Positions 1,384 to 44,130 of a stretch of 64,000 bases of DNA are shown here, piece by piece (position 1 is the first letter of the stretch; each line of letters opens with the position of its first letter). Origin of the DNA: Macrostomum lignano (lineage: Eukaryota); assembly GCA_002269645.1 (NCBI GenBank), contig NIVC01000052.1:496001-560000 (forward strand). Direction: 5' to 3'. The notes below the pieces were generated by a model. That model was not told the DNA's origin, searched no databases, and saw only the letters and a list, made by a program, of their open reading frames with translations. The position numbers and the translations under genes are program-made.

Positions 1384-6009
<4,626 letters not shown>

Positions 6010-30694: not shown

Positions 30695-31800
30695 GTGTTT
30701 GTCCCTGAGTCGGTGTGTGTCCCTGAGTCTGTGCGTGTCCCTGAGTCTGTGTTTGTCCCTGAGTCTGTGTGTGTCCCTGAGTCTGTGTTTGTCCCTGAGT
30801 CTGTGTGTGTCCCTGAGTCTGTGTGTGTCCCTGAGTGGGTGCGTGTCCCTGAGTGGGTGCGTGTCCCTGAGTCTGTGCGTGTCCCTGAGTCGGTGTGTGT
30901 CCCTGAGTATGTGTGTGTCCCTGAGTGGATGCGTGTCCCTGAGTCTGTGTGTGTCCCTGAGTCTGTGTGTGTCCCTGAGTGGGTGCGTGTCCCTGAGTCG
31001 GTGTTTGTCCCTGAGTCTGTGCGTGTCCCTGAGTCTGTGTGTGTGTCCCTGAGTCTGTGTGTGTCCCTGAGTCTGTGTGTGTCCCTGAGTGGATGCGTGT
31101 CCCTGAGTCTGTGTGTGTCCCTGAGTCTGTGTGTGTCCCTGAGTCTGTGTGTGTCCCTGAGTCTGTGTGTGTCCCTGAGTGGGTGCGTGTCCCTGAGTCT
31201 GTGCGTGTCCCTGAGTCGGTGTGTGTCCCTGAGTCTGTGTGTGTCCCTGAGTGGATGCGTGTCCCTGAGTCTGTGTGTGTCCCTGATTCTGTGTGTGTCC
31301 CTGAGTGGGTGCGTGTCCCTGAGTCGGTGTTTGTCCCTGAGTCGGTGTGTGTCCCTGAGTCTGTGCGTGTCCCTGAGTCTGTGTGTGTGTCCCTGAGTCT
31401 GTGTGTGTCCCTGAGTCTGTGTGTGTCCCTGAGTGGATGCGTGTCCCTGAGTCTGTGTGTGTCCCTGAGTCTGTGTGTGTCCCTGAGTCTGTGTGTGTCC
31501 CTGAGTCTGTGTGTGTCCCTGAGTGGGTGCGTGTCCCTGAGTCGGTGTTTATCCCTGAGTCGGTGTGTGTCCCTGAGTCTGTGCGTGTCCCTGAGTCTGT
31601 GTGTGTGTCCCTGAGTCTGTGTGTGGCCCTGAGTCTGTGTGTGTCCCTGAGTCTGTGCGTGTCCCTGAGTCTGTGTTTGTCCCTTGAGTCTGTGTGTGTC
31701 CATGAGTCGGTGTGTCGTCTTTGTCTATCTGTCTGTCTGTCTGTCTGTCTGTGTCTGTCTGTCTGTCTGTCTGTGTCTGTCTGTCTGTCTGTCTGTCAGT
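30695..31800. repeat. 18-bp minisatellite (GTGTGTCCCTGAGTCTGT) followed by (GTCT)n
   Basis: Direct tandem repeat. Confidence 0.92.
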
Positions 31801-32524
31801 CTAGTAAAAGTACCTCTCCTGCACGCACAGGCAAAGCCTGTTTAGCCAGACCCCCCGCTCTCCCACAAGGCGAGACTCTGTGGACAGAGCAAAGCAAACA
31901 CCGCAGCGCAACTGCAAAAAGTTCAGCCAGCCCGACTCGCGCAGATTCGATTTTGAATTCAGTAAAAAAATAGTGTTGAATAAAATCCGACATAACTCTC
32001 CTAAAGCACATGAGCTGTAATTGAATTTGCCACATTGCAGGTCCCAAGGTCAAACAGGCATAACTACTCTCGTATTTTTCTGGCTTCAGTTTTGTATTAA
32101 ATTTTATATGGATGCTTTTTTAGCAATCTGCTCCATCTGCTCATTTTTTCTACCCCCTCTCTCTCCCTCCCACTTCCTCTCCCCTCAGTTCCCCCTTAAA
32201 CCCCTCCCCGCCTAACAATGCCCCGCCTGATATCCTAGCAACAGGTGTTGAGTCCCTGGCAACGCCAGCCCTGAGGCAGAGGATTTAGATATCTATATCT
32301 GCATCGCTTAACACAAGCGCAGCATCTGCTCAGAGCCACATTCCGGCAGTGTCGCAGCTGCAGCCTGAAACCCAGGAAGCTGAGCTATTGATCTCCTTAG
32401 TGATGGAGCCGCCGTTTGGGAGATTCCCGCCAGCCTCTGGCTCCGGGCCTTCACGCAACAGGGCCTACACTACACTGGGTGAGCGACTCACTTCTGCGGC
32501 TGAGAGCTTCTCAGCCTGGCTCTG

Positions 32525-33230
32525 CCTGCATCCCAACCTTCATCTCCCTGCATCCCAATCTCCAACTCCCTGCATCCCAATCTCCAACTCCCTGCATCCC
32601 AATCTTCAACTCCCTGCATCCCAATCTCCAACTCCCTGCATCCCAATCTCCAACTCCCTGCATCCCAATCTTCAACTCCCTGCATCCCAATCTTCATCTC
32701 CCTGCATCCCAATCTCCACTCCCTGCATCCCAATCTCCAACTCCCTGCATCCCAATCTTCAACTCCCTGCATCCCAATCTCCAACTCCCTGCATCCCAAT
32801 CTCCAACTCCCTGCATCCCAATCTTCAACTCCCTGCATCCCAATCTCCAACTCCCTGCATCCCAATCTCCAACTCCCTGCATCCCAATCTTCAACTCCCT
32901 GCATCCCAATCTCCAACTCCCTGCATCCCAATCTCCAACTCCCTGCATCCCAATCTCCAACTCCCTGCATCCTAATCTCCAACTCCCTGCATCCCAATCT
33001 TCATCTCCCTGCATCCTAGTCTTCAACTCCCTGCATCCCAATCTTCATCTCCCTGCATCCCAATCTCCACTCCCTGCATCCCAATCTCCAACTCCCTGCA
33101 TCCCAATCACCAACTCCCTGCATCCCAATCTCCAACTCCCTGGATCCCAATCTCCAACTCCCTGCATCCCAATCTCCAACTCCCTGCATCCCAATCTTTA
33201 TCTCCCTGCATCCCAATCTCCAACTCCCTG
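32525..33230. repeat. 22-bp minisatellite (CCCTGCATCCCAATCTCCAACT)
   Basis: Direct tandem repeat. Confidence 0.92.
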
Positions 33231-33246
33231 TTTCCTCTGTGTTTCC

Positions 33247-34419
33247 ATGCCAAGAATTGATGACGGAGCCGAGCTTTCCTCTGTTCCAGACGATGTCAAA
33301 GCTTTCGAAGCGCGGGTCAAACTGGCAACACAACAACAGTATGAGTCTTGCGAACCAAAGCAGACGGCTGTGGCTGACACTAAAGAAGAAGAATCCAAAG
33401 CAGAAGTCAATAATTCGAATCTGGAAACTTCAGACACTAAGAAAGTAACTAAGAAAGACGAGAAGCTGTACAAAGCTTCATCTGTGGCCCCGGCAACCAG
33501 CCCAGCGCCGAAGCGATGCCAAAGCGGAGTCGATGGCGCCAAGAACCGATCTTCTGAGTCCGGGGTCCCGCCGTCCCCCAGCAGCTGCTGCAGGCCCAAG
33601 ACCGCCCCGGCCCGACTGTCTGCCGCCCGAGTCGCTTCCGGCAGCGCTGCGACCGGGAACTCCTACAATGAGGCTCTCAAAGTGCACGGCTGGAAGATGG
33701 AGATTCACGGCGATCCGCTCGGACTGAAGTGAGTTACGGTTGTGAGTGAGTGAGTGAGTGAGTGAGTGAGTGAGTGAGTGAGTGAGTGAGTGAATGAGTG
33801 AGTGAGTGAGTGAGTGAGTGAATGAGTGAGTGAGTGAGTGAGTGAGTGAGTGAGTGAGTGAGTGAGTGAGTGAGTGAGTGAGTGAGTGAGTGAGTGAGTG
33901 AGAGAGTGAGCGAGTGAGTGAGTGAGTGAGTGAGTGGTGAGTGAGTGAGTGAGTGAGTGAGTGGTGAGTGAGTGAGTGAGTGAGTGAGTGAGTGAGTGAG
34001 TGAGTGAGTGAGTGAGTGAGTGAGTGAGTGAGTGAGCGATTGAGTGAGTGAGTGAGTGAGTGAGTGAATGAGTGAGCGAGTGAGTGAATGAGTGAGTGAG
34101 TGAGTGAGTCAGTAAGTCAGTCATTCGGTCAGTCAGTCAGTCAGTCAGTCAGGGCAACCCCAACCACCGCAGGTGGCCGCACCTGCCCCAGCTGAGGCTG
34201 ATAAACATTACCATCCCGGAACCGGAAGTGAGGCCGCCGCCGCCGCGGATTTCCAGGCAGAACTGCGGCTCATTTTTCCACGCCACAGTGCCAGCAGCTC
34301 GGCTGAGCTTCGACATTCACCCCAGGTTCGCCTCGGAAAAATTCAACAGATCGCGGGCAGCGCTGATGCGGCAGGGCAGGTGGGGCTTCGCCCACCACGA
34401 CTTCGCCTTCATTTATTGA
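33247..34419 (+). CDS. Hypothetical protein; exons ~33247-33728 and 34173-34419 (upstream exons possible near 32400-32478)
   Basis: A phase-2 junction AA|GTGAGT...CGCAG|G joins YNEALKVHGWKMEIHGDPLGLK to WPHLPQLRL...LSFDIHPRFASE...HHDFAFIY*. The aromatic-rich C-terminus looks conserved, but no family was recognised. Confidence 0.65.
33742..34152. repeat. (GAGT)n then (TCAG)n microsatellites filling an intron
   Basis: Direct repeats. Confidence 0.93.
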
Positions 34420-34661
34420 ACCGAAATATTCTCACATTTTCTTCGAGTTGTCAATGCAACTAATGGTGGCAATGTACTTTAAGGAGTTTTCCTTAAAAAC
34501 CGTTATTTCCACGTGTACATTGTTGACTTTCTCACGATAAGTACATGAAAAATGTACGCGATTTTTACTAATAAATGAGGACTTAAGATCCAACTAATCT
34601 TTGACTTGTGCACCAAATCCAATTCTTGGAAATGCTTTTTCAAGCCTACTGGAAATAAAAT

Positions 34662-35505
34662 CTACAGAGGGGTTGGGCGCCAGCTACAGAGGGGTTGGGC
34701 CCCAGCTACAGAGGGGTTGGGCGTCAGCTACAGAGGGGTTGGGCCCCAGCTACAGAGGGGTTGGGCCCCAGCTACAGAGGGGTTGGGCGTCAGCTACAGA
34801 GGGGTTGGGCCCCAGCTACAGAGGGGTTGGGCCCCAGCTACAGAGGGGTTGGGCCCCAGCTACAGAGGGGTTGGGCCCCAGCTACAGAGGGGTTGGGCCC
34901 CAGCTACAGAGAGTTGGGCGCCAGCTACAGAGGGGTTGGGCCCCAGCTACAGAGGGGTTGGGCGTCAGCTACAGAGGGGTTGGGCCCCAGCTACAGAGGG
35001 GTTGGGCCCCAGCTACAGAGGGGCTGGGCGCCAGCTACAGAGGGGTTGGGCCCCAGCTACAGAGGGGTTGGGCGTCAGCTACAGAGGGGTTGGGCCCCAG
35101 CTACAGAGGGGTTGGGCCCCAGCTACAGAGGGGTGGGGCGCCAGCTACACAGGGGGTGGGGCGTCAGCTACACAGGGGGTGGGGCGTCAGCTACACAGGG
35201 GGTGGGGCCCCAGCTACAGAGGGGTGGGGCGCCAGCTACAGAGGGGTGGGGCACCAGCCACAGAGGGGTGGGGCGCCAGCTACATAGAGGTTGGGCGCCA
35301 GCTACATAGAGGTTGGGCGCCAGCTACATAGAGGTGGGGCACCAGCCACAGAGGGGTGGGGCGCCAGCTACATAGAGGTTGGGCGCCAGCTACATAGAGG
35401 TTGGGCGCCAGCTACAGAGGGGTGGGGCGCCAGCTACACAGTGGTGGAGCGCCAGCTACACAGTGGTGGAGCGCCAGCTACACAGTGGTGGAGCGCCAGC
35501 TACAG
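34662..35505. repeat. 22-bp G-rich minisatellite (CAGCTACAGAGGGGTTGGGCCC)
   Basis: Direct tandem repeat. Confidence 0.92.
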
Positions 35506-35545
35506 AAGGGTTGGATACTCTTAGATACTCTTAGCTTCTCTTAGA

Positions 35546-37262: not shown

Positions 37263-40200
37263 TTAGTCTTCTCGATTTGCGAACCTTCCTTCGCCTCTTA
37301 CCTTGGCACCGGTTTCAGTAGCTTCGGAACTTGTCCTATCGCTACGGGAGTGCTCATATTTACCGCCTCTCTCACTGCTGCCTCGGCCTCGGAAGTGCTC
37401 ACTGCCGCCTAGGCCTCGGAAGTGCTCACTGCCGCCTCGGCCTCGGAAGTGCTCACTGCCGCCTCGGCCTCGGAAGTGCTCACTGCCGCCTAGGCCTCGG
37501 AAGTGCTCACTGCCGCCTCGGCCTCGGAAGTGCTCACTGCCGCCTCGGCCTCGGAAGTGCTCACTGCCGCCTCGGCCTCGGAAGTGCTCACTGCCGCCTC
37601 GGCCTCGGAAGTGCTCACTGCCGCCTCGGCCTCGGAAGTGCTCACTGCCGCCTCGGCCTCGGAAGTGCTCACTGCCGCCTCGGCCTCGGAAGTGCTCACT
37701 GCCGCCTCTCGCTATGCCGCCTCGGCCAAAGTAGCTGCGCGAATTGTCCCTTTCGTCGGGATTGTTGGAAGCACTAGTGTATAATGAAACATGATCAACG
37801 CTGCTTGCCGCTACTCCAGCACAAGTGACATCTTCGAGACCAGTTGCATCTCCAGCACCAGTAACATTTCCTCCGGTAACCGTGACATTAGATGCTACGT
37901 CTTCGGCATTTTTAGAATCTCCGACACAAGCAACTACCTGTGTTGAATGTGCGCCAGTGGGTACAACAGATCTGCTCTCACACGAGAAGACGGCCCAGGT
38001 CTCTTCAGCGAACTCCGCTGCCAGGTGCGCCACATCATACGCCGTTCTATTGCACTCGCCGCCTCCCGACCAATCAGAACGCAGCTGTTCATTTAGCTCA
38101 GCCACGAGAATCTCGGCTGAGTGCTTCTCACTGTTCACCAGGTAGATCCAGTGGACAATCCAGCAGTCCTCCTGTGACAGAATCCTGTGCTCACGACGGG
38201 CCATGAATTCGAACATATCTTTCGTGCTCTTCTGCTGATGGAAGTTCGGGTCAATTTCGGCGACTGCCTCTGAAAGACATTTTCGGACGTTCTCAGGCGA
38301 TACCGAATTATTTGTCGTCGCTGTGGCGCCTGGTTGGGTTTGAATTTTTTTTCCTTCTTTCAGATAGGTTATCAGTGATTCTCGCTCAAATGCTTTTGTG
38401 TCTTTGCCATCTAAAGCCAGCTTGTTGAGCTTTTCTTGGAAGTCACTTCCAAGCTGCTTCTTGATTTTGTTGAACGCGTGAGGATAATAGTGGTCGATAT
38501 TTATGCTTCGCTTTTCTTTCTCCTTACGAGATAGTGCCAATTTTTTCGCATCTTTCGCTTCTTTTTTGCAACGAGAAAGTAAGACAACTAGAGAGCGGTC
38601 CAGAACCTCCTTCGACTCCTTCACCACTGAAACGATGAGGTTGTTGAGCTCCTGCGTTTGTTGCTGAGTTTTGCCTCCTCTCTCAAGACGCTGCTTCGTT
38701 AAACGTAGTCTGCTGGACCTCATCAAGTTTCCCCGGTCGCCTGAGCCATCGCAGGATCGACTCGATGCCACTGTGCTCATGAGCTGGTCCAGCTCTAAAA
38801 ACTTTGCGATTCTCCGTTTCGCTAGCTCTACAGGATCATTAGTCGATTCCGTGTTATCTTCGCGAAGCCAAAACCTGTTCGGATCCTGTAGTGTGGCCTC
38901 CATTTCAGCGCACAGCTCATACAGCTGAGTGCTGAAGAACAGAGAGTCCCGGGCACTCCGACTCACGACATCGTTAATGACAATCTCGGCAGTGTTTTGG
39001 CTCGCCTTTCGTTGCTCAAGAAATTCTAGAAGCTTCGGCACAGCATCTCTGCAACCGCACTGTAGACACTCCTGCAGCTTCTGAAAGCTTGCATTCGGGT
39101 CCTCCAGCAGCGACTGAGCGAGTAGCTTGTACTTGCACTCAATGTGGTCTGGCAGCTTCCTGAAGCAGCCAGAGGCATTGTCTAATCGGCCCTTTTTTAT
39201 ATAAAAACGACCCAGATGCTCAAGCGCGAACTCGTTGCTGGCATCTTTATTAAGCGCCTGTAGAAAGAGAGGCTCGATGTTTACCGGCTCTTTGAAGTCG
39301 CCGACGTTGGCAGCAAACCAGGCTACATATTCCTCGAAGCCGGCAGTCTTTTGGGTTAGGCATAGAAAAAACTCCTTCTTCTTGCTAAACCAGACCTGGT
39401 CCACTTTTGGATCGGCCTCTAAAGCAGCAACGCATGACTCTAAGGCCTCCTTTGTATCGCCCTGTTTTATCAAGTATAGCGCCTTGTGAAACTCGATAGC
39501 TGAAACGTTCTTCAAATAAACTCCGAAGCTCTCTCTCATGGAGACAAACTCATCGATAACTTGCTGCTTGTTCAAGGTTTGCATTTGTAGCTCCAAAAGG
39601 CGAAGATTCAGCCATATGTGACCCGGCTCACCTGCTAATTGCTTGCCTCTTTCAAGCAGTTCAATCGCTTTATCTCGGTCTCCTGCTTCTTCAGCCTCAT
39701 TGGCTATGGTTAAAAAGAAGTCTGGATCTTTGAGCATCATTGCTACTTTTCCTGCTTCCTCAAGTAATGTTTTTCGACGGCTTTCACAGTCCAGATTCGA
39801 AATTTTCTTAATGTGCCTATAGGTCTTCAAGCAGATCTTCATGTCCACGTGCGAGTTCTCCTTCTCTTCCTCGGACATTCTCCGAAGAATATCGACTGCT
39901 CTATCCGTAAGTTCGCAGCATAGCTCAGTCAATCTTCTGTTGTAAAGAATTGCCTCAGCATAATTGGAGTAGAAGGTAGCATTGTTAGTTGTTTGTCCGG
40001 TTCGCTCGCCAATTTCTCGTGCCCTGCTCCACAGCTGAAGCTGAGCTTTATCGGCGTGCTTCTTCACAACCTGTCTGTCGCATCGAGCTCTCAGGAACGC
40101 CTCGCCGTACAACCAGTTGAAATTATTCGCCTGAAGCCTTGACGCCTCCGCGAAGGCAACGACTCCAACCGGATACTTCATGGGACCGAAGCAGTCGAAT

Positions 40201-40640
40201 GTGACACCTTTCACTCCGTACACCCGGGCCTGGCTGTTTGAGTCGCTCCACAGGCTGTTAAGTCTCTGCATTTTCGGTTCGATTTCTGCAGGCTTCAGAG
40301 TTCTATTTTGTCCTTTTCTCAGCTGCTCGAGGTGCAGCATGTTGGCCCTGATGACAAACTCGCTAGATACTTGCACATCTTCCTGCTTATCGCGCCGGAT
40401 TTGCTCATCGATCGCCAGAGCTTCCTCGAGGCATTTGTGAGCCAAACCGAAGTTCTTACCCCTTTTGCGAGTATATAGGTAAGCCAGAGTCGTTAAATGA
40501 GCCGACTTCTTGTGAGGCTGGCGGTCAATCTTTCTTTCAGTCTTTTTGATAACTTCATCGATGCTTGTGTTCGTGCTGCCATCCTCTGGGAGCCAGGTAA
40601 AGTGACATTCTAGCTCCTCCAGTTTTTCTAGATTCGACAT
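37263..40640 (-). CDS. Single-exon 1125-aa TPR protein with IFIT-like N-terminus, candidate HEPN-like segment and C-terminal RGG repeats
   Basis: Uninterrupted ORF with first ATG at 40640. LEELECHFTW, LAYL...CLEEA and GVTFDCFGPMKY...AFAEASRLQANNFNWLYGEAFLRARCD parallel the IFIT N-terminal motifs as remembered. Several further TPR-like helical pairs follow. Confidence 0.85.
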   Translation of the reverse strand: MSNLEKLEELECHFTWLPEDGSTNTSIDEVIKKTERKIDRQPHKKSAHLTTLAYLYTRKRGKNFGLAHKCLEEALAIDEQIRRDKQEDVQVSSEFVIRANMLHLEQLRKGQNRTLKPAEIEPKMQRLNSLWSDSNSQARVYGVKGVTFDCFGPMKYPVGVVAFAEASRLQANNFNWLYGEAFLRARCDRQVVKKHADKAQLQLWSRAREIGERTGQTTNNATFYSNYAEAILYNRRLTELCCELTDRAVDILRRMSEEEKENSHVDMKICLKTYRHIKKISNLDCESRRKTLLEEAGKVAMMLKDPDFFLTIANEAEEAGDRDKAIELLERGKQLAGEPGHIWLNLRLLELQMQTLNKQQVIDEFVSMRESFGVYLKNVSAIEFHKALYLIKQGDTKEALESCVAALEADPKVDQVWFSKKKEFFLCLTQKTAGFEEYVAWFAANVGDFKEPVNIEPLFLQALNKDASNEFALEHLGRFYIKKGRLDNASGCFRKLPDHIECKYKLLAQSLLEDPNASFQKLQECLQCGCRDAVPKLLEFLEQRKASQNTAEIVINDVVSRSARDSLFFSTQLYELCAEMEATLQDPNRFWLREDNTESTNDPVELAKRRIAKFLELDQLMSTVASSRSCDGSGDRGNLMRSSRLRLTKQRLERGGKTQQQTQELNNLIVSVVKESKEVLDRSLVVLLSRCKKEAKDAKKLALSRKEKEKRSINIDHYYPHAFNKIKKQLGSDFQEKLNKLALDGKDTKAFERESLITYLKEGKKIQTQPGATATTNNSVSPENVRKCLSEAVAEIDPNFHQQKSTKDMFEFMARREHRILSQEDCWIVHWIYLVNSEKHSAEILVAELNEQLRSDWSGGGECNRTAYDVAHLAAEFAEETWAVFSCESRSVVPTGAHSTQVVACVGDSKNAEDVASNVTVTGGNVTGAGDATGLEDVTCAGVAASSVDHVSLYTSASNNPDERDNSRSYFGRGGIARGGSEHFRGRGGSEHFRGRGGSEHFRGRGGSEHFRGRGGSEHFRGRGGSEHFRGRGGSEHFRGRGGSEHFRGLGGSEHFRGRGGSEHFRGRGGSEHFRGLGGSEHFRGRGSSERGGKYEHSRSDRTSSEATETGAKVRGEGRFANRED
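37381..37705 (-). repeat. 27-bp coding tandem repeat, 12 copies, encoding RG(R/L)GGSEHF
   Basis: GAAGTGCTCACT recurs every 27 bp from 37392 to 37689. Confidence 0.95.
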
Positions 40641-41404
40641 GCCTTTCACTTATTTTGCAGACTTCTCAATTTTACTTGTTTATGAGAGATTCAATCTTTT
40701 ATCAGACCGCTAGACTTGTGCTTGCCCTAGACCATAAATATAGACTTAGAGATACAGCTAGTGCAGTGAGTTCAGAGTACAGTAACATTACAGAAAGGCA
40801 GTTTTCACAAGAATAAAGTACAGCCAATTTGACTGCTGTAGTTCTACATTGGCCGTACATTCACGCGCTGCCGTATTAAGCATGCACGGACACACATTCT
40901 CGTCTCGAGCTGTACAATTTTGTTCAATCTATGCACATTCCACGCTCATTTAATCCTTCATTTACTGGAATATTCACAATAGAAAGTGCAGAGAATTTCC
41001 AGGAAATGCGCTTGTCTCCAAAGAATTGTGTTAGGTACGAGCGTAGCTTTTGCAGTTTAACAAGCTCATAGTGCTTCATACAGAAGCGGTTGTTAGAAGC
41101 TGCGTCACTCACTCGGTGTCTTTTGTAAAAACCATTTTTCTAGGTTTCTAACAAAACATTTCTGGGTTGGGATGTTTACTAAACAAAGCATCACCGGATA
41201 TTTGTCAAGCTGGGCTGATAGAAAAATAGAAGAAAGTTTAGGGAAAAGTACTCCTTTTCCGGACATAGAAGCGAAAAGTTCTTTGTTCTTTTTTTAACTT
41301 TCTGCGGATTTTGTAGGCAGTGATGTTTGGAACAAGTTAAGCTACCTTATTACGAGCGCATATGTCACATGTCTCTATTTTGTAGCATTCTAACTGAGAA
41401 GCTA

Positions 41405-44130
41405 GAACTTCAGGAAGTGTCTATCAGAGCCGAGCCTGGACTTCACTGTGAGGACCTGAGCTCTGTTTGGACACTCTGGTACACCTCAGCGGATCAACGA
41501 GGCCGTGGAGGAGTTGGAGCACTGATCGGCCCGAGACTGCAGCAGAGCTATCGCTGCTCTTTCTTGTCCCCCGGATGCTTCGGGTAGACGTCCGGCTTCG
41601 CGGCCGGAACGCTTGCCTGTTCTGCGTGTACGCGCCACCTGCCACCCGCCCAGATGAGGCTCAGGACTTCTTCGAGCAGCTCTCTGCGCGCGTGGAGGAG
41701 ACTGCGCAGCGCGACACGGTGGTCGTACTCGGAGACCTAAACGCAGTTCCGCGTAGGTCCGAGCGGTCGCTGTTTGTGACGCCCCGCGAGAACGGCAACA
41801 ACCAGGCGCTGGAGGACTTCCTGGAGAGGCAGGATATGGTGTCGGCCAACACCCGCTTCCGCAAGCCACCCAGCAGGCTCGCGACTTTCGTGGGCTGCAA
41901 ACGGAGGTGGCAGAACGCGCGCGGCCGGTTTGCTACATGGAGGCTAGCACAGATCGACCACGTGCTTCTGCGATCCCTGAGCGCCGCCGCGCTGTCAACT
42001 GCCGCACCATCACGCCGCTGGCTCTGCGGTCTGATCATCGGTTTCTCATGTGCGACCTCGAGCTACGCAATCCGCTTTACCGTCCGCCAAAGCGGCCACC
42101 GCGGCGCTACTACCGCGCTCTCAAAGACGCCGGAACGCACTGCCACTTTGCTAGCAACTTCATCACTGCGCTCGGCAGCAAGCGTGGGGATGCCGAGTAC
42201 GCGGATGTGAGCGCCGCGGAACAAGCGGTCCCGTTGATGCGACCGGCCCAACGTGGGCAGCCGGTCTGGCAGGACGACCCTGTGATTCAGCAAGCGAGGG
42301 AAGATCTGGAGAAGCTCCGTCTGAGCAGGCGACCTACTCGCGAGGCGGAGGAGGCTCTGGCGACTGTCTATCTGCAGTGGCAGCAGGCCGCAGTTGATGA
42401 AGTTGTCCAGGCCGTCTCTGCCGCTGGGCCCGACGCCAGAGGGCGCGTGGCCTGGTCCGCCATTAACGCTCTGACGGCGGAAGCGGTGCATCCAACTGAA
42501 TCTGGCAGGCGACACTGCGGATGAGCGCAGGAACGAGCTGCGCGAGTTCTTCGCCGCCATAGTCAACGCACCGCCACCCCCACTGCCCAACATCCTGACG
42601 CTGCCACCAGAGACTCCGTTGCCGTCAGATGACAGTTTTAACGTTGCACCAGTCACCATGGCTGAAGTCGTAACGCTCGCCCAGAAGACGCCGGGCCGCA
42701 AGGCGCTGGGTCCGGACGAGGTGCCCATCGAGGCGCTGCGCATCTACTGTGTGGCCAGTGAGGTCGCCCGTGTGATGAACCGCGTGCTCTCCGGTGAGGT
42801 GGCACCCACCGAGTGGATCATGGCGCACATCATCGCCATTCCAAAGAAGCCGGGCACTATACGACTAGACGAGCACCGAGGCATCTGCCTGCAATCCTGT
42901 GCTGCGAAGTTGTTCAACCGGATGCTGCTATCGCGGTTGCAACCCGTGCTGGATCCTTACCTGCGACCTGAGCAGAACGGGTTTCGGCCCCACCGTGGCA
43001 CAGTGACGCAGATCCTAGCTCTTCGCCGAATCATCGAGGAGGCGCGCTCGCGCCAGTTGGACCTGATTGTTGTCTTCATTGACTTCATGAAGGCATTCGA
43101 CTCGGTTGCAAGGGCTGCGCTCCCACATGTGCTCCGCGCGTACCATGTGCCAAAACACCTGATCTCCGCCATAATGACATTGTACTGTGCTACGAGAGCA
43201 GCTGTGATGACGTCGGACGGCTTGTCGGACTCCTTCGAGACATCCTCCGGGGTGCTCCAGGGGACACACTAGCGCCGTTCCTGTTCGTCCTGGTGCTTGA
43301 CTGGGCGCTGCGGACTGCTCTTCCTACCGACGAAGACGGCTTCCTATTGCGGCGACGCGTGGGTCAACGTCAACTGGAGAAACGGCTCAGCATGCTTGGC
43401 TACGCCGATGACCTCGCCCTGCCGTTCTCCACCGTAGAGGGCGCCCAGCGCCAGCTGGACAAGCTGGTTAGCGCTGCAGCGAGCGTCGGCCTGGTGGTCA
43501 ACACGAAGAAGACCGTTGTGCTCTGTGGGCCGGGCGACATCGAGGCCGCAATTTCTGCCGAGGCGCTGACGGGCAGGTAACGGAGCTTCCGCGCTGTCAG
43601 CAGTTCGTATACATCGGCGGTCTGGTACCTGACGTCCGCGAAGATCTGCGGCGTCGCCGCGGGCTCGCTTGGGCTGCCTTTCGCTCTGTGAGGGCGGTCC
43701 TGCAGTCCGAGGCCCTACCTGACCGCCAGAGGGCGGCCCTGTTCCAGGCGGTGGTCAAGACCGTCCTGTTGTATAACGCCGAGACCTGGACGCTGACGGA
43801 TTCGCTCGAACAGCAAGTCAACGCGGCGCACGCTGGCCTGCTGCGCGCCGCCTTTAAGATCAACGACGAGCAGATCACTAACGCGGCACTGCTGCACCGG
43901 CCTGGCCCGTCCAAGTGAACTGCTGCGACTTCGGCGACTCCAGCTGGCAGGCCACATCATCCGCGCCGAGTCCTACTGCTCGCAGCCGGTGCAGGAGGTG
44001 CTGCTGCTAACGCTGCAGGCACCCTATCGGTGCGGCCAGGCCCGAACTCGGCGTTTCGTCGACTGCCTGCTGGCCGACGCTGGCGCCCCGGCAGTGCGGC
44101 CTTTGTTCGCGCCAAGGCGCTGTGACGCTG
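41405..44130 (+). mobile_element. Decayed non-LTR retrotransposon (RTE-like; APE endonuclease + reverse transcriptase), 5'-truncated and frameshifted
   Basis: APE motifs LQE, GRGGVGALI, CVYAPP, VLGDLNA, QIDHVL. RT motifs KALGPD, HRGICLQSCAAKLFNRML, EQNGFRP, FIDFMKAFDSV, GVLQG, LAPFLFVLVLD, GYADDLAL. These are spread over several reading frames. Confidence 0.92.

What the first reader, a model, noticed from the sequence alone, without database searches (positions are those of the whole stretch)
38100..38660. Candidate HEPN-like nuclease segment fused behind the TPR sensor
Seen: an all-helical-looking region with SKEVLDRSLVVLL, then YYPH, then WIVHWIYLVNSEKHS (His near aa 840). From memory, this order recalls bacterial HEPN-type families with RSALD...(Y)FP...W-L-x-x-L-x-x-L-x-N-x-x-KH, where N/R-x-x-x-H forms the RNase site. 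Inference, weakly supported by eye: a single-chain sensor-RNase analogous in logic to RNase L or TPR-gated bacterial defence nucleases. I know of no described IFIT-HEPN fusion.
Basis: inference. Interest (0 to 1): 0.75.

Follow-up and report, generated by a model that had tools for sequence, protein, structure and literature searches.

The report
Orphan helical domain on IFIT-like protein
The flagged stretch is part of a real, strongly conserved all-helical end-domain of a flatworm protein whose front end resembles vertebrate antiviral IFIT proteins. No test supports calling it a HEPN RNA-cutting enzyme, it matches no described domain, and its function is still unknown.

Summary
The window is Macrostomum lignano (flatworm) DNA. 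The finding lies inside one intronless 1128-codon ORF (37263-40649, minus strand). The region is predicted all-helical.

They belong to a ~330-aa C-terminal module (aa 560-895). Its last ~90 aa are the best-conserved part of the protein: W830, W834 and E882 are 26/26; E820, E879 and F880 are 25/26; R819, N839, K842, H843, Y871 and H875 are 24/26.

An exhaustive profile search of 1.84 billion proteins found only 27 hits. Those traced are M. lignano paralogs or come from two unnamed eukaryotic ENA assemblies. No relatives turned up in bacterial or archaeal genomes, viral contigs or JGI metagenomes.

The HEPN reading fails its defining test: no Rx4-6H column exists. N-x-x-K-H keeps only the N...H spacing and has no arginine. 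Pfam, PADLOC, NCBIfam, PDB sequences and Foldseek on a confident model (pLDDT 80.6, pTM 0.84) give no HEPN match and no other significant match.

The N-terminal profile does hit human IFIT5 (E 3.9e-5) and IFIT1. So this is an IFIT-like protein carrying an undescribed C-terminal domain. It is probably RNA-related, and catalysis is possible but unshown.

The parts
37263..40640 (-). Intronless gene for a ~1125-aa protein. The probable start is Met at 40638-40640; the mechanical ORF starts at GTG 40649. The stop is TAA at 37263-37265. It is 99% identical to M. lignano hypothetical protein BOX15_Mlig030191g2.
   Evidence: by far the longest ORF in the window
40122..40640 (-). IFIT-like N-terminal region (aa 4-176) that starts with the LECHFTW motif (40593-40613).
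   Evidence: The family profile A6 hits human IFIT5 (3zgq, E 3.9e-5) and IFIT1 (4hou, E 0.0063), collinear from the N-terminus.
39150..39719 (-). Region with recognisable TPR repeats (aa 311-500).
   Evidence: Pfam TPR_2, TPR_8, TPR_14, TPR_19 and TPR_7 hits. No TPR hit lies beyond aa 500.
37965..38972 (-). Family-defining all-helical C-terminal module (aa 560-895). It contains the whole flagged segment.
   Evidence: Profile search: 27 hits, E down to 1e-41 outside the close paralogs. AlphaFold2 pLDDT 80.6, pTM 0.84, 12 helices. No Pfam, PDB or Foldseek match.
38694..38732 (-). Basic helix motif (W)RxxRLxxTK, aa 640-652 (GNLMRSSRLRLTK).
   Evidence: R644 19/21, R647 21/22, K652 18/22
38577..38615 (-). 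The conserved part is (A/S)(R/K)xxLDxC/S.
   Evidence: L683 23/23, D684 21/23
38478..38489 (-). The family consensus is (Y/F/H)P(H/F)A. It is preceded by a K/E-rich insertion of about 22 aa that paralogs P0002 and P0003 lack and that has low pLDDT.
   Evidence: P723 19/23, A725 19/23, H724 not conserved; pLDDT 53-61 over the insertion
37974..38243 (-). Terminal conserved core (aa 803-892, four helices). This is the most conserved part of the protein.
   Evidence: 73% identity to paralog P0002 here versus 49-50% elsewhere. Nearly invariant residues are listed. pLDDT is 80-96.
38118..38195 (-).
   Evidence: R819 24/26, E820 25/26, W830 and W834 26/26, N839/K842/H843 24/26 each. There is no Arg 4-6 residues before H843.
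37998..38042 (-). AYDVAHLAAEFAEET (aa 870-884). Y871, H875, E879 and E882 are spaced i, i+4, i+8, i+11, so they lie on one face of the last helix.
   Evidence: Y871 and H875 24/26, E879 and F880 25/26, E882 26/26. The helix face is inferred from the spacing.
37266..37964 (-). Low-complexity tail (aa 896-1128), including a 27-bp tandem repeat (37371-37708) that encodes 12 GGSEHFRG(R) units, an RG-rich sequence.
   Evidence: The tail is not conserved: P0002 has GEATGVQA repeats, and P0019 has a different RG-rich repeat.

Best explanation
The flagged segment is part of a previously undescribed all-alpha C-terminal domain of about 330 aa. This domain is the conserved, family-defining end of a small, lineage-restricted family of IFIT-like proteins. 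The family is known from Macrostomum lignano and from two unnamed eukaryotic ENA assemblies, where the genes sit in tandem arrays. The domain is not a HEPN domain.

Shown:
- the domain boundaries;
- a confident helical fold with no known structural relative;
- near-invariance of a polar set in the last four helices (R819/E820, N839/K842/H843, Y871/H875/E879/E882) together with W830 and W834;
- IFIT homology of the N-terminus.

Inferred:
- The protein works on RNA. The IFIT-like clamp and the RG-rich tail would hold RNA, and the conserved core would be the output site.
- My preferred mechanism is that the invariant His/Lys/Glu cluster forms one pocket that acts chemically on the bound RNA. This could be acid-base cleavage using H843/H875 with K842, or a metal site built from H875/E879/E882/E820. 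I put this at about one chance in three.
- The nearly equal alternative is that the same cluster is a non-catalytic binding or latch surface.
For: The domain is real and conserved:
- The profile search of 1.84 billion representatives gave 27 hits, with E 1e-41 to 1e-5 outside the close paralogs.
- The core is 73% identical to paralog P0002, versus about 50% for the rest of the protein.

The fold is confident and unmatched:
- pLDDT 80.6, pTM 0.84, 12 helices.
- Foldseek against PDB gives best E 0.7 with probability <=0.12 among the 50 hits listed; against BFVD the best E is 0.43.
- Profiles of the module and of the core find nothing among PDB sequences.
- No Pfam, PADLOC or NCBIfam family is shared by the members.

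The RNA context rests on three observations:
- The N-terminal profile hits IFIT5 (E 3.9e-5) and IFIT1 (E 0.0063).
- RG-rich repeat tails occur in this protein and in paralog P0019.
- Paralog P0024/P0031 joins the same module to C-x7-C-x4-C-x3-H zinc fingers. UniProt names it C3H1-type.

Distribution: tandem paralog arrays next to retroelements in the other organism(s). No relatives in bacterial/archaeal genomes, viral contigs or JGI metagenomes.
Against: - No biochemical or expression data exist for any member. No paper names these genes.
- The RNA role is guilt by association only.
- The core is net acidic (-2 to -9 in most members). That is unlike a generic nucleic-acid-binding surface.
- Model coordinates could not be inspected, so it is not shown that the invariant polar residues meet in one pocket.
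- Three members lack individual residues. P0021 has E/R/N in place of N839/K842/H843. P0026 has its His one position early and Q at 875. P0005 has Y at 875.
- Invariant polar residues can also be buried structural networks or peptide-binding residues.
Confidence: 0.45

Rival explanations
1. The module is a non-catalytic helical domain. It either extends the IFIT-like superhelix to close or regulate the RNA clamp, or it mediates oligomerisation or partner binding, as the C-terminal parts of vertebrate IFITs do. In this reading the invariant W/N/E/H residues form a binding groove or a buried hydrogen-bond network.
For: - The fold is all-helical and directly continues a TPR solenoid.
- The core is net acidic.
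- There is no similarity to any nuclease or enzyme family.
- The only sequence echo of the E-x-A-W...N helix is the peptide-binding H3 helix of importin-alpha ARM repeats, at a non-significant E of 0.23.
Against: - The core is more conserved than the repeat region (73% versus 50%).
- Its invariant set is rich in His, Lys, Glu and Arg, which looks more like a functional site than helix packing.
- No TPR model hits beyond aa 500.
- It contains a 42-residue helix and has no significant TPR or ARM structural match.
Confidence: 0.35
2. This is the reader's model: a HEPN-fold RNase in which N839-x-x-x-H843 is a variant of the R-N-x-x-x-H catalytic motif, gated by the IFIT-like sensor.
For: - The N-to-H spacing equals that of the common R-N-x-x-x-H form of the HEPN motif.
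- The motif sits in a loop just before a helix within a four-helix terminal unit.
- The motif is conserved in 24/26 members.
- The context is RNA-related.
Against: - The arginine that defines the motif is absent in every member. No R-x4-6-H column is found in more than 5/27 sequences. The window's own R868-x6-H875 is shared only with P0003.
- There are no HEPN hits in Pfam on 23 members at E<=10, PADLOC, NCBIfam or PDB sequences.
- No HEPN structure appears among the 50 listed Foldseek PDB hits, and none of the 145 matches reaches E 0.001.
- Only one such motif exists per chain.
Confidence: 0.06
3. The middle of the module (the LDRSL...YPHAF region) is a diverged DUF1722 (YbgA/RudS C-terminal) domain. 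That bacterial helical domain is proposed to bind the tRNA anticodon arm.
For: - Paralog P0002 passes Pfam's DUF1722 threshold (29.2 bits against a cut-off of 22.5, aa 649-734). P0003 gives 18.3 bits.
- DUF1722 is helical, has no structural relatives, and helps RudS act on tRNA (PMC11417400).
Against: - Only these two near-identical paralogs hit. The window protein and 21 other members do not.
- The match rests on YPHAFGQFKKQL aligning to LMHvqGYFKkxL.
- A profile-profile comparison of the family (A3) with a 9-sequence DUF1722 alignment (A5) gives probability 1%, and it aligns a different region.
Confidence: 0.04

Closest known systems
Vertebrate IFIT proteins (IFIT5, IFIT1; PDB 3zgq, 4hou)
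   Same: - The N-terminus starts with the same L-E-C-H-F-T-W motif.
- About 170 residues align collinearly (E 3.9e-5 and 0.0063).
- TPR repeats follow.
- The gene is intronless and belongs to a multi-paralog family, which forms tandem arrays in the related ENA assemblies.
   Different: - About 1125 aa instead of about 480.
- It carries a 330-aa non-TPR C-terminal module and a repeat tail that IFITs lack.
- IFIT5 Lys150, a triphosphate contact from my own knowledge of the IFIT5 structure papers, aligns with Cys.
- The host is a flatworm, which is not known to have interferon. One 2013 survey placed IFITs only in jawed vertebrates (PMC3688568).
HEPN superfamily RNases (RNase L/Ire1 KEN domain, Cas13, Csm6, HepT, sacsin HEPN)
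   Same: - It is an all-helical unit.
- It has a conserved His in a loop before a helix.
- The N-x-x-x-H spacing matches.
- The idea of a repeat-domain sensor joined to an RNase resembles RNase L in logic.
   Different: - There is no conserved Arg, so no Rx4-6H motif.
- There is no profile or structural match.
- The most invariant residues here (W830, W834, E820, E879, E882) have no HEPN counterpart.
DUF1722 (YbgA; C-terminal domain of the tRNA desulfidase RudS)
   Same: It is a helical domain without structural relatives, linked to RNA binding. One paralog passes the Pfam threshold.
   Different: Family-level comparison fails (probability 1%). DUF1722 is bacterial or archaeal and about 120-150 aa. 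The conserved motifs differ.
Importin-alpha ARM repeats (H3 helix with the W/N peptide-binding motif)
   Same: A short E-x-A-W-x-x-x-(N) helix resembles FLKRKE...EAAWALTNIASGN.
   Different: The match is not significant (E 0.23, 31 residues). There is no ARM or TPR structural match.

Membership tests
HEPN superfamily | Conserved Rx4-6H motif (commonly R-[NHD]-x-x-x-H) | tested here: not met
   No column pair has R and H 5-7 apart in more than 5/27 sequences. Position 838, just before N839, is V/D/I/H/G. Only the N...H spacing is kept.
HEPN superfamily | Match to a HEPN sequence family model | tested here: not met
   The 23 family members were scanned against Pfam at E<=10 and NCBIfam; the window's module and full-length protein were scanned against PADLOC. 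No HEPN family was hit.
HEPN superfamily | Four-helix up-and-down bundle superposable on solved HEPN domains | tested here: inconclusive
   Foldseek of the confident 336-aa model against PDB shows no HEPN entry among the 50 hits listed, and nothing better than E 0.7. The 90-aa core could not be searched alone, and small helical bundles are hard for Foldseek.
HEPN superfamily | Metal-independent RNase activity dependent on the motif His and Arg | not testable with these tools
   This needs biochemistry.
IFIT family (N-terminal part of the same protein) | N-terminal CHFTW motif and collinear sequence similarity to IFIT1 and IFIT5 | tested here: met
   Profile A6 against PDB: IFIT5 at E 3.9e-5 (positions 5-173 against residues 13-175) and IFIT1 at E 0.0063. 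These are the top two hits, ahead of designed TPRs.
IFIT family (N-terminal part of the same protein) | Tandem TPR-like helical repeats | tested here: met
   Pfam TPR hits over aa 311-500.
IFIT family (N-terminal part of the same protein) | Conserved 5'-ppp/cap RNA pocket residues | tested here: inconclusive
   Only the first 175 residues align. The IFIT5 K150 equivalent is Cys, and the Y156 equivalent is Tyr. The rest of the pocket was not aligned.
IFIT family (N-terminal part of the same protein) | Induction by interferon or virus; antiviral RNA binding | not testable with these tools
   No expression or functional data were found.
DUF1722 (PF08349) | Score above Pfam's gathering threshold | tested here: not met
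   The window protein has no hit. Only paralog P0002 passes (29.2 against 22.5), and P0003 is below threshold at 18.3.
DUF1722 (PF08349) | Family-level profile-profile similarity | tested here: not met
   hhalign of A3 against A5 gives probability 1.08% and E 0.05, and it aligns a different region.
TPR/ARM solenoid continuation | Repeat models or repeat structures matching aa 560-895 | tested here: not met
   No TPR Pfam hit lies beyond aa 500. The PEX5 TPR structure appears only at E 1.6 with probability 0.05. Importin-alpha scores E 0.23.

The most novel reading that the evidence does not exclude
The conserved core is a new class of RNA-acting catalytic domain with a His/Lys/Glu site unrelated to HEPN. 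It is hard-wired to an IFIT-type RNA 5'-end sensor. That would make this family a single-chain sense-and-destroy antiviral protein of invertebrates. It would also show that the IFIT fold predates vertebrates and interferon.
Probability: 0.15. Interest if true: 0.85.

Novelty: new variant of a known kind. Interest (0 to 1): 0.55.

Why it matters
IFITs are textbook interferon effectors. A 2013 survey (PMC3688568) reported them only from jawed vertebrates.

Here a flatworm family has a statistically supported IFIT-like N-terminus, and it always carries an extra, highly conserved domain that no database describes. That offers a possible view of what IFIT-type proteins looked like before interferon existed. 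It also gives a defined 90-aa orphan domain, with about a dozen nearly invariant residues, that can be mutated and assayed directly.

If the domain is catalytic, it would be a new RNA-effector fold. If it is not, it is still a new partner module for an RNA-sensing repeat protein. M. lignano is a tractable laboratory animal with RNAi and transgenesis, so the question can be tested.

Tried and rejected
1. HEPN was rejected on the motif test and on every profile and structure search.

2. DUF1722 came from a Pfam hit in paralog P0002 only. I fetched E. coli YbgA and eight plasmid RudS C-termini and built alignment A5. hhalign against the family gave 1% probability, and a local HMM scored 6.6 bits. 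Rejected.

3. TPR or coiled-coil continuation: no repeat hits beyond aa 500 and a compact fold with pTM 0.84. Not supported.

4. The importin-alpha ARM echo at E 0.23 is noted only.

5. The first AlphaFold2 run, with a 3-sequence alignment, was unusable (pLDDT 46.8). I did not use that model.

6. The word-index homolog searches returned only M. lignano paralogs. The exhaustive search was needed.

7. Hit P0028 (E 1.5e-4) is a repeated Cys-rich kinase-like protein that matches only a variable part of the profile. I treated it as a false positive.

8. Pattern scans of bacterial/archaeal genomes, IMG/VR viral contigs and JGI metagenomes found no relative.

9. Literature searches for these gene names and for invertebrate or flatworm IFIT-like genes found nothing relevant.

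10. Co-loss of H843 and H875 as evidence for a catalytic pair does not hold up. P0021, P0026 and P0005 each lose different residues.

11. The organism behind the two ENA assemblies could not be identified. GC is 35-39% versus 47% for the window, and there is no nucleotide similarity.
Full report
**What the sequence is.** The window is eukaryotic DNA rich in tandem repeats. Its longest ORF by far (37263..40649, minus strand, 1128 codons) is 99% identical to the Macrostomum lignano hypothetical protein BOX15_Mlig030191g2. The flagged interval 38100-38660 corresponds to aa ~664-850 of this ORF. The real start is probably the Met at codon 4 (MSNLEK...), as in the database protein.

**Checking the observation.** All three quoted strings are present at the stated place. 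SKEVLDRSLVVLL is aa 679-691, YYPH is aa 721-724, and WIVHWIYLVNSEKHS is aa 830-844. A first AlphaFold2 run with only three close paralogs was useless (pLDDT 46.8). After more homologs were collected, the model of aa 560-895 became confident (mean pLDDT 80.6, pTM 0.84). It is entirely helical, with 12 helices and no strands.

**Homologs.**
- Word-index searches found only M. lignano paralogs: P0002 at ~50% identity over the full length, and the fragment P0003.
- An exhaustive HMMER search of 1.84 billion representative proteins, using a profile of aa 560-895, found 27 proteins. Sixteen had E<=1e-10.
- Those that carry names are all M. lignano proteins.
- All the other hits looked up (20 of the 27 in all) come from ENA. 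The four traced to contigs lie in two assemblies, ERZ25074608 and ERZ26859043. They sit on long contigs with 35-39% GC and retroelement genes, and several paralogs lie in tandem. This is another eukaryote, or two, that I could not name.
- Several members are full-length and share the whole architecture, from an N-terminal LECHFxW motif to the C-terminal block.
- Signature-pattern scans of 185,579 bacterial and archaeal genomes, IMG/VR viral contigs and JGI metagenomes found no relative.
- The family is therefore small and lineage-restricted.

**Anatomy of the C-terminal module.** The conserved elements, in order, are:
- LFFSxxxYExCA (aa 570-581).
- A basic helix (W)RxxRLxxTK, with R647 in 21/22 sequences.
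- (A/S)(R/K)xxLDxC inside a 42-residue helix, with L683 23/23 and D684 21/23.
- (Y/F/H)P(H/F)A, with P723 19/23; the His is not conserved.
- A variable linker.
- A ~90-aa terminal core of four helices: FxAR-R-E-HxIIxxExAW-xxx-W-xxxx-N-xx-K-H ... LNEYR ... TAYDVAHxAAEFAEQT.

In the core, W830, W834 and E882 are invariant (26/26). E820, E879 and F880 are 25/26. R819, N839, K842, H843, Y871 and H875 are 24/26.

Y871, H875, E879 and E882 are spaced i, i+4, i+8, i+11, so they lie on one face of the last helix (inference from spacing). The core is the best-conserved part of the protein: 73% identity to P0002, against 49-50% for the rest.

**Is it HEPN?** The defining feature of HEPN RNases is the Rx4-6H motif.
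- No pair of alignment columns has R and H at that spacing in more than 5 of 27 sequences.
- The window's own R868-x6-H875 is shared with only one paralog.
- N839-x-x-x-H843 reproduces the N...H spacing of the common R-N-x-x-x-H form. But the position before N is V, D, I, H or G, never a conserved Arg.
- Pfam gave no HEPN hit for any of 23 members, even at E<=10. PADLOC gave no hit for the window's protein, and NCBIfam gave only scattered single-member noise.
- Profiles of the module and of the core found nothing significant among PDB sequences.
- Foldseek with the confident model found no match with E<0.4 in PDB or BFVD, and no HEPN entry among the listed hits. The top rows are unrelated long-helix proteins, 14-3-3, membrane proteins and one TPR, all at probability <=0.13.
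- One caveat applies. I could not search the 90-aa core alone, and small helical bundles are hard to detect. The fold test is therefore inconclusive, not negative. The motif and profile tests are negative.
- I put HEPN at about 6%.

**A false lead: DUF1722.**
- Paralog P0002 passes Pfam's DUF1722 threshold (29.2 bits) over the LDRSL...YPHAF region, and P0003 scores 18.3 bits.
- DUF1722 is the helical C-terminal domain of the tRNA desulfidase RudS. It is proposed to bind the anticodon arm (PMC11417400).
- I built a DUF1722 alignment from E. coli YbgA and eight diverse plasmid RudS proteins.
- Profile-profile comparison with the family gave 1% probability and aligned a different region.
- The P0002 match rests on YPHAFGQFKKQL resembling LMHvqGYFKkxL.
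- The window protein and all other members do not hit.
- I reject it as a family relationship.

**The neighbouring "TPR sensor".**
- Pfam sees TPRs only in aa 311-500.
- A profile of the first ~240 residues of eight family members has human IFIT5 as its best PDB hit (3zgq, E 3.9e-5, positions 5-173 against residues 13-175). IFIT1 is second (4hou, E 0.0063). Both alignments start at the shared LECHFTW motif.
- The IFIT-like label is therefore supported by a statistical test, not only by eye.
- IFIT5 K150 aligns with Cys and Y156 with Tyr. The remaining RNA-pocket residues lie outside the alignment, so RNA 5'-end recognition remains an inference.
- A 2013 survey reported IFITs only from jawed vertebrates (PMC3688568). 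I found no paper on flatworm IFIT-like genes or on these gene models.

**What the module probably does.**

Shown:
- It is a compact, confident, orphan helical domain.
- It is the most constrained part of the family.
- It has an invariant set rich in His, Lys, Glu, Arg, Asn and Tyr.

Context:
- The module is always found with RNA-associated parts: the IFIT-like clamp, and RG-rich repeat tails in this protein and in P0019.
- In P0024/P0031 it is joined to two C-x7-C-x4-C-x3-H zinc fingers.

From this I infer an RNA-directed role for the core. The residue pattern is what one expects of an active site, either acid-base His/His/Lys or a His/Glu metal site. I favour catalysis on clamp-bound RNA at roughly one in three.

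A non-catalytic binding or latch role is about equally likely (0.35). It is supported by the net acidic charge of the core and by the lack of any enzyme relative.

No member shows a clean co-loss of the candidate catalytic residues, so that argument is not available. Everything beyond [quoted passage not shown] is inference.

**Novelty and verdict.** The gene is best described as an IFIT-like protein with an undescribed C-terminal domain, which makes it a new variant of a known kind. Interest is moderate to high (0.55). The IFIT homology outside vertebrates and the orphan, enzyme-like core are both worth following. There is as yet no functional, expression or structural evidence, and the family is known from very few genomes.

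Noticed in passing
window 37371-37708: A 27-bp tandem repeat (12.5 copies, 98% matches) encodes 12 GGSEHFRG(R) units in the protein tail. The database protein P0001 from the same species has only 5 units. This is either a copy-number polymorphism or an assembly collapse.
   Followed up: partly
window 30695-35514: A dense block of unrelated tandem repeats lies next to the gene: 18-bp x56 (30695-31715), 22-bp x32 (32525-33230), GTGA x95 (33742-34121) and 22-bp x39 (34662-35514). The long 'ORFs' listed there are repeat artefacts.
   Followed up: no
window 41467-43272: Degenerate non-LTR retrotransposon: an Exo_endo_phos endonuclease fragment (41467-42207, E 2e-7) and an RVT_1 reverse-transcriptase fragment (42619-43269, E 4e-16) sit in different frames. 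They lie in a GC-rich block (63% GC at 42-44 kb).
   Followed up: partly
window 2316-3509 (minus): A 397-aa ORF matches pentapeptide-repeat models (Pentapeptide_4, E 4e-29) in a region with strong GC skew. It may be a real repeat protein or a translation of repetitive DNA.
   Followed up: no
window 40122-40640 (aa 4-176 of the same gene): The N-terminal family profile gives human IFIT5 and IFIT1 as the top PDB hits (E 3.9e-5 and 0.0063). This is statistical support for an IFIT homolog in a flatworm, outside the taxa where a 2013 survey found IFITs.
   Followed up: partly
L012 1-16420 and L011 10001-20551 (ENA ERZ25074608): Paralogs of this family lie in tandem arrays (3-4 copies within 16 kb) in an unidentified eukaryote with 35-39% GC. 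Some called proteins, such as P0004 with two copies of the module, look like fusions of neighbouring copies made by the gene caller.
   Followed up: partly
proteins P0024/P0031 (M. lignano paralog, not in the window): The same C-terminal module is followed by repeated Cys-rich units that include two C-x7-C-x4-C-x3-H zinc fingers. Pfam does not recognise them, but UniProt labels the protein C3H1-type.
   Followed up: partly
window aa 697-720 (about 38490-38561): A K/E-rich insertion of about 22 residues (…EAKDAKKLALSRKEKEKRSINIDH…) lies between the LD helix and the YPH motif. Paralogs P0002 and P0003 lack it, and model confidence there is low.
   Followed up: no
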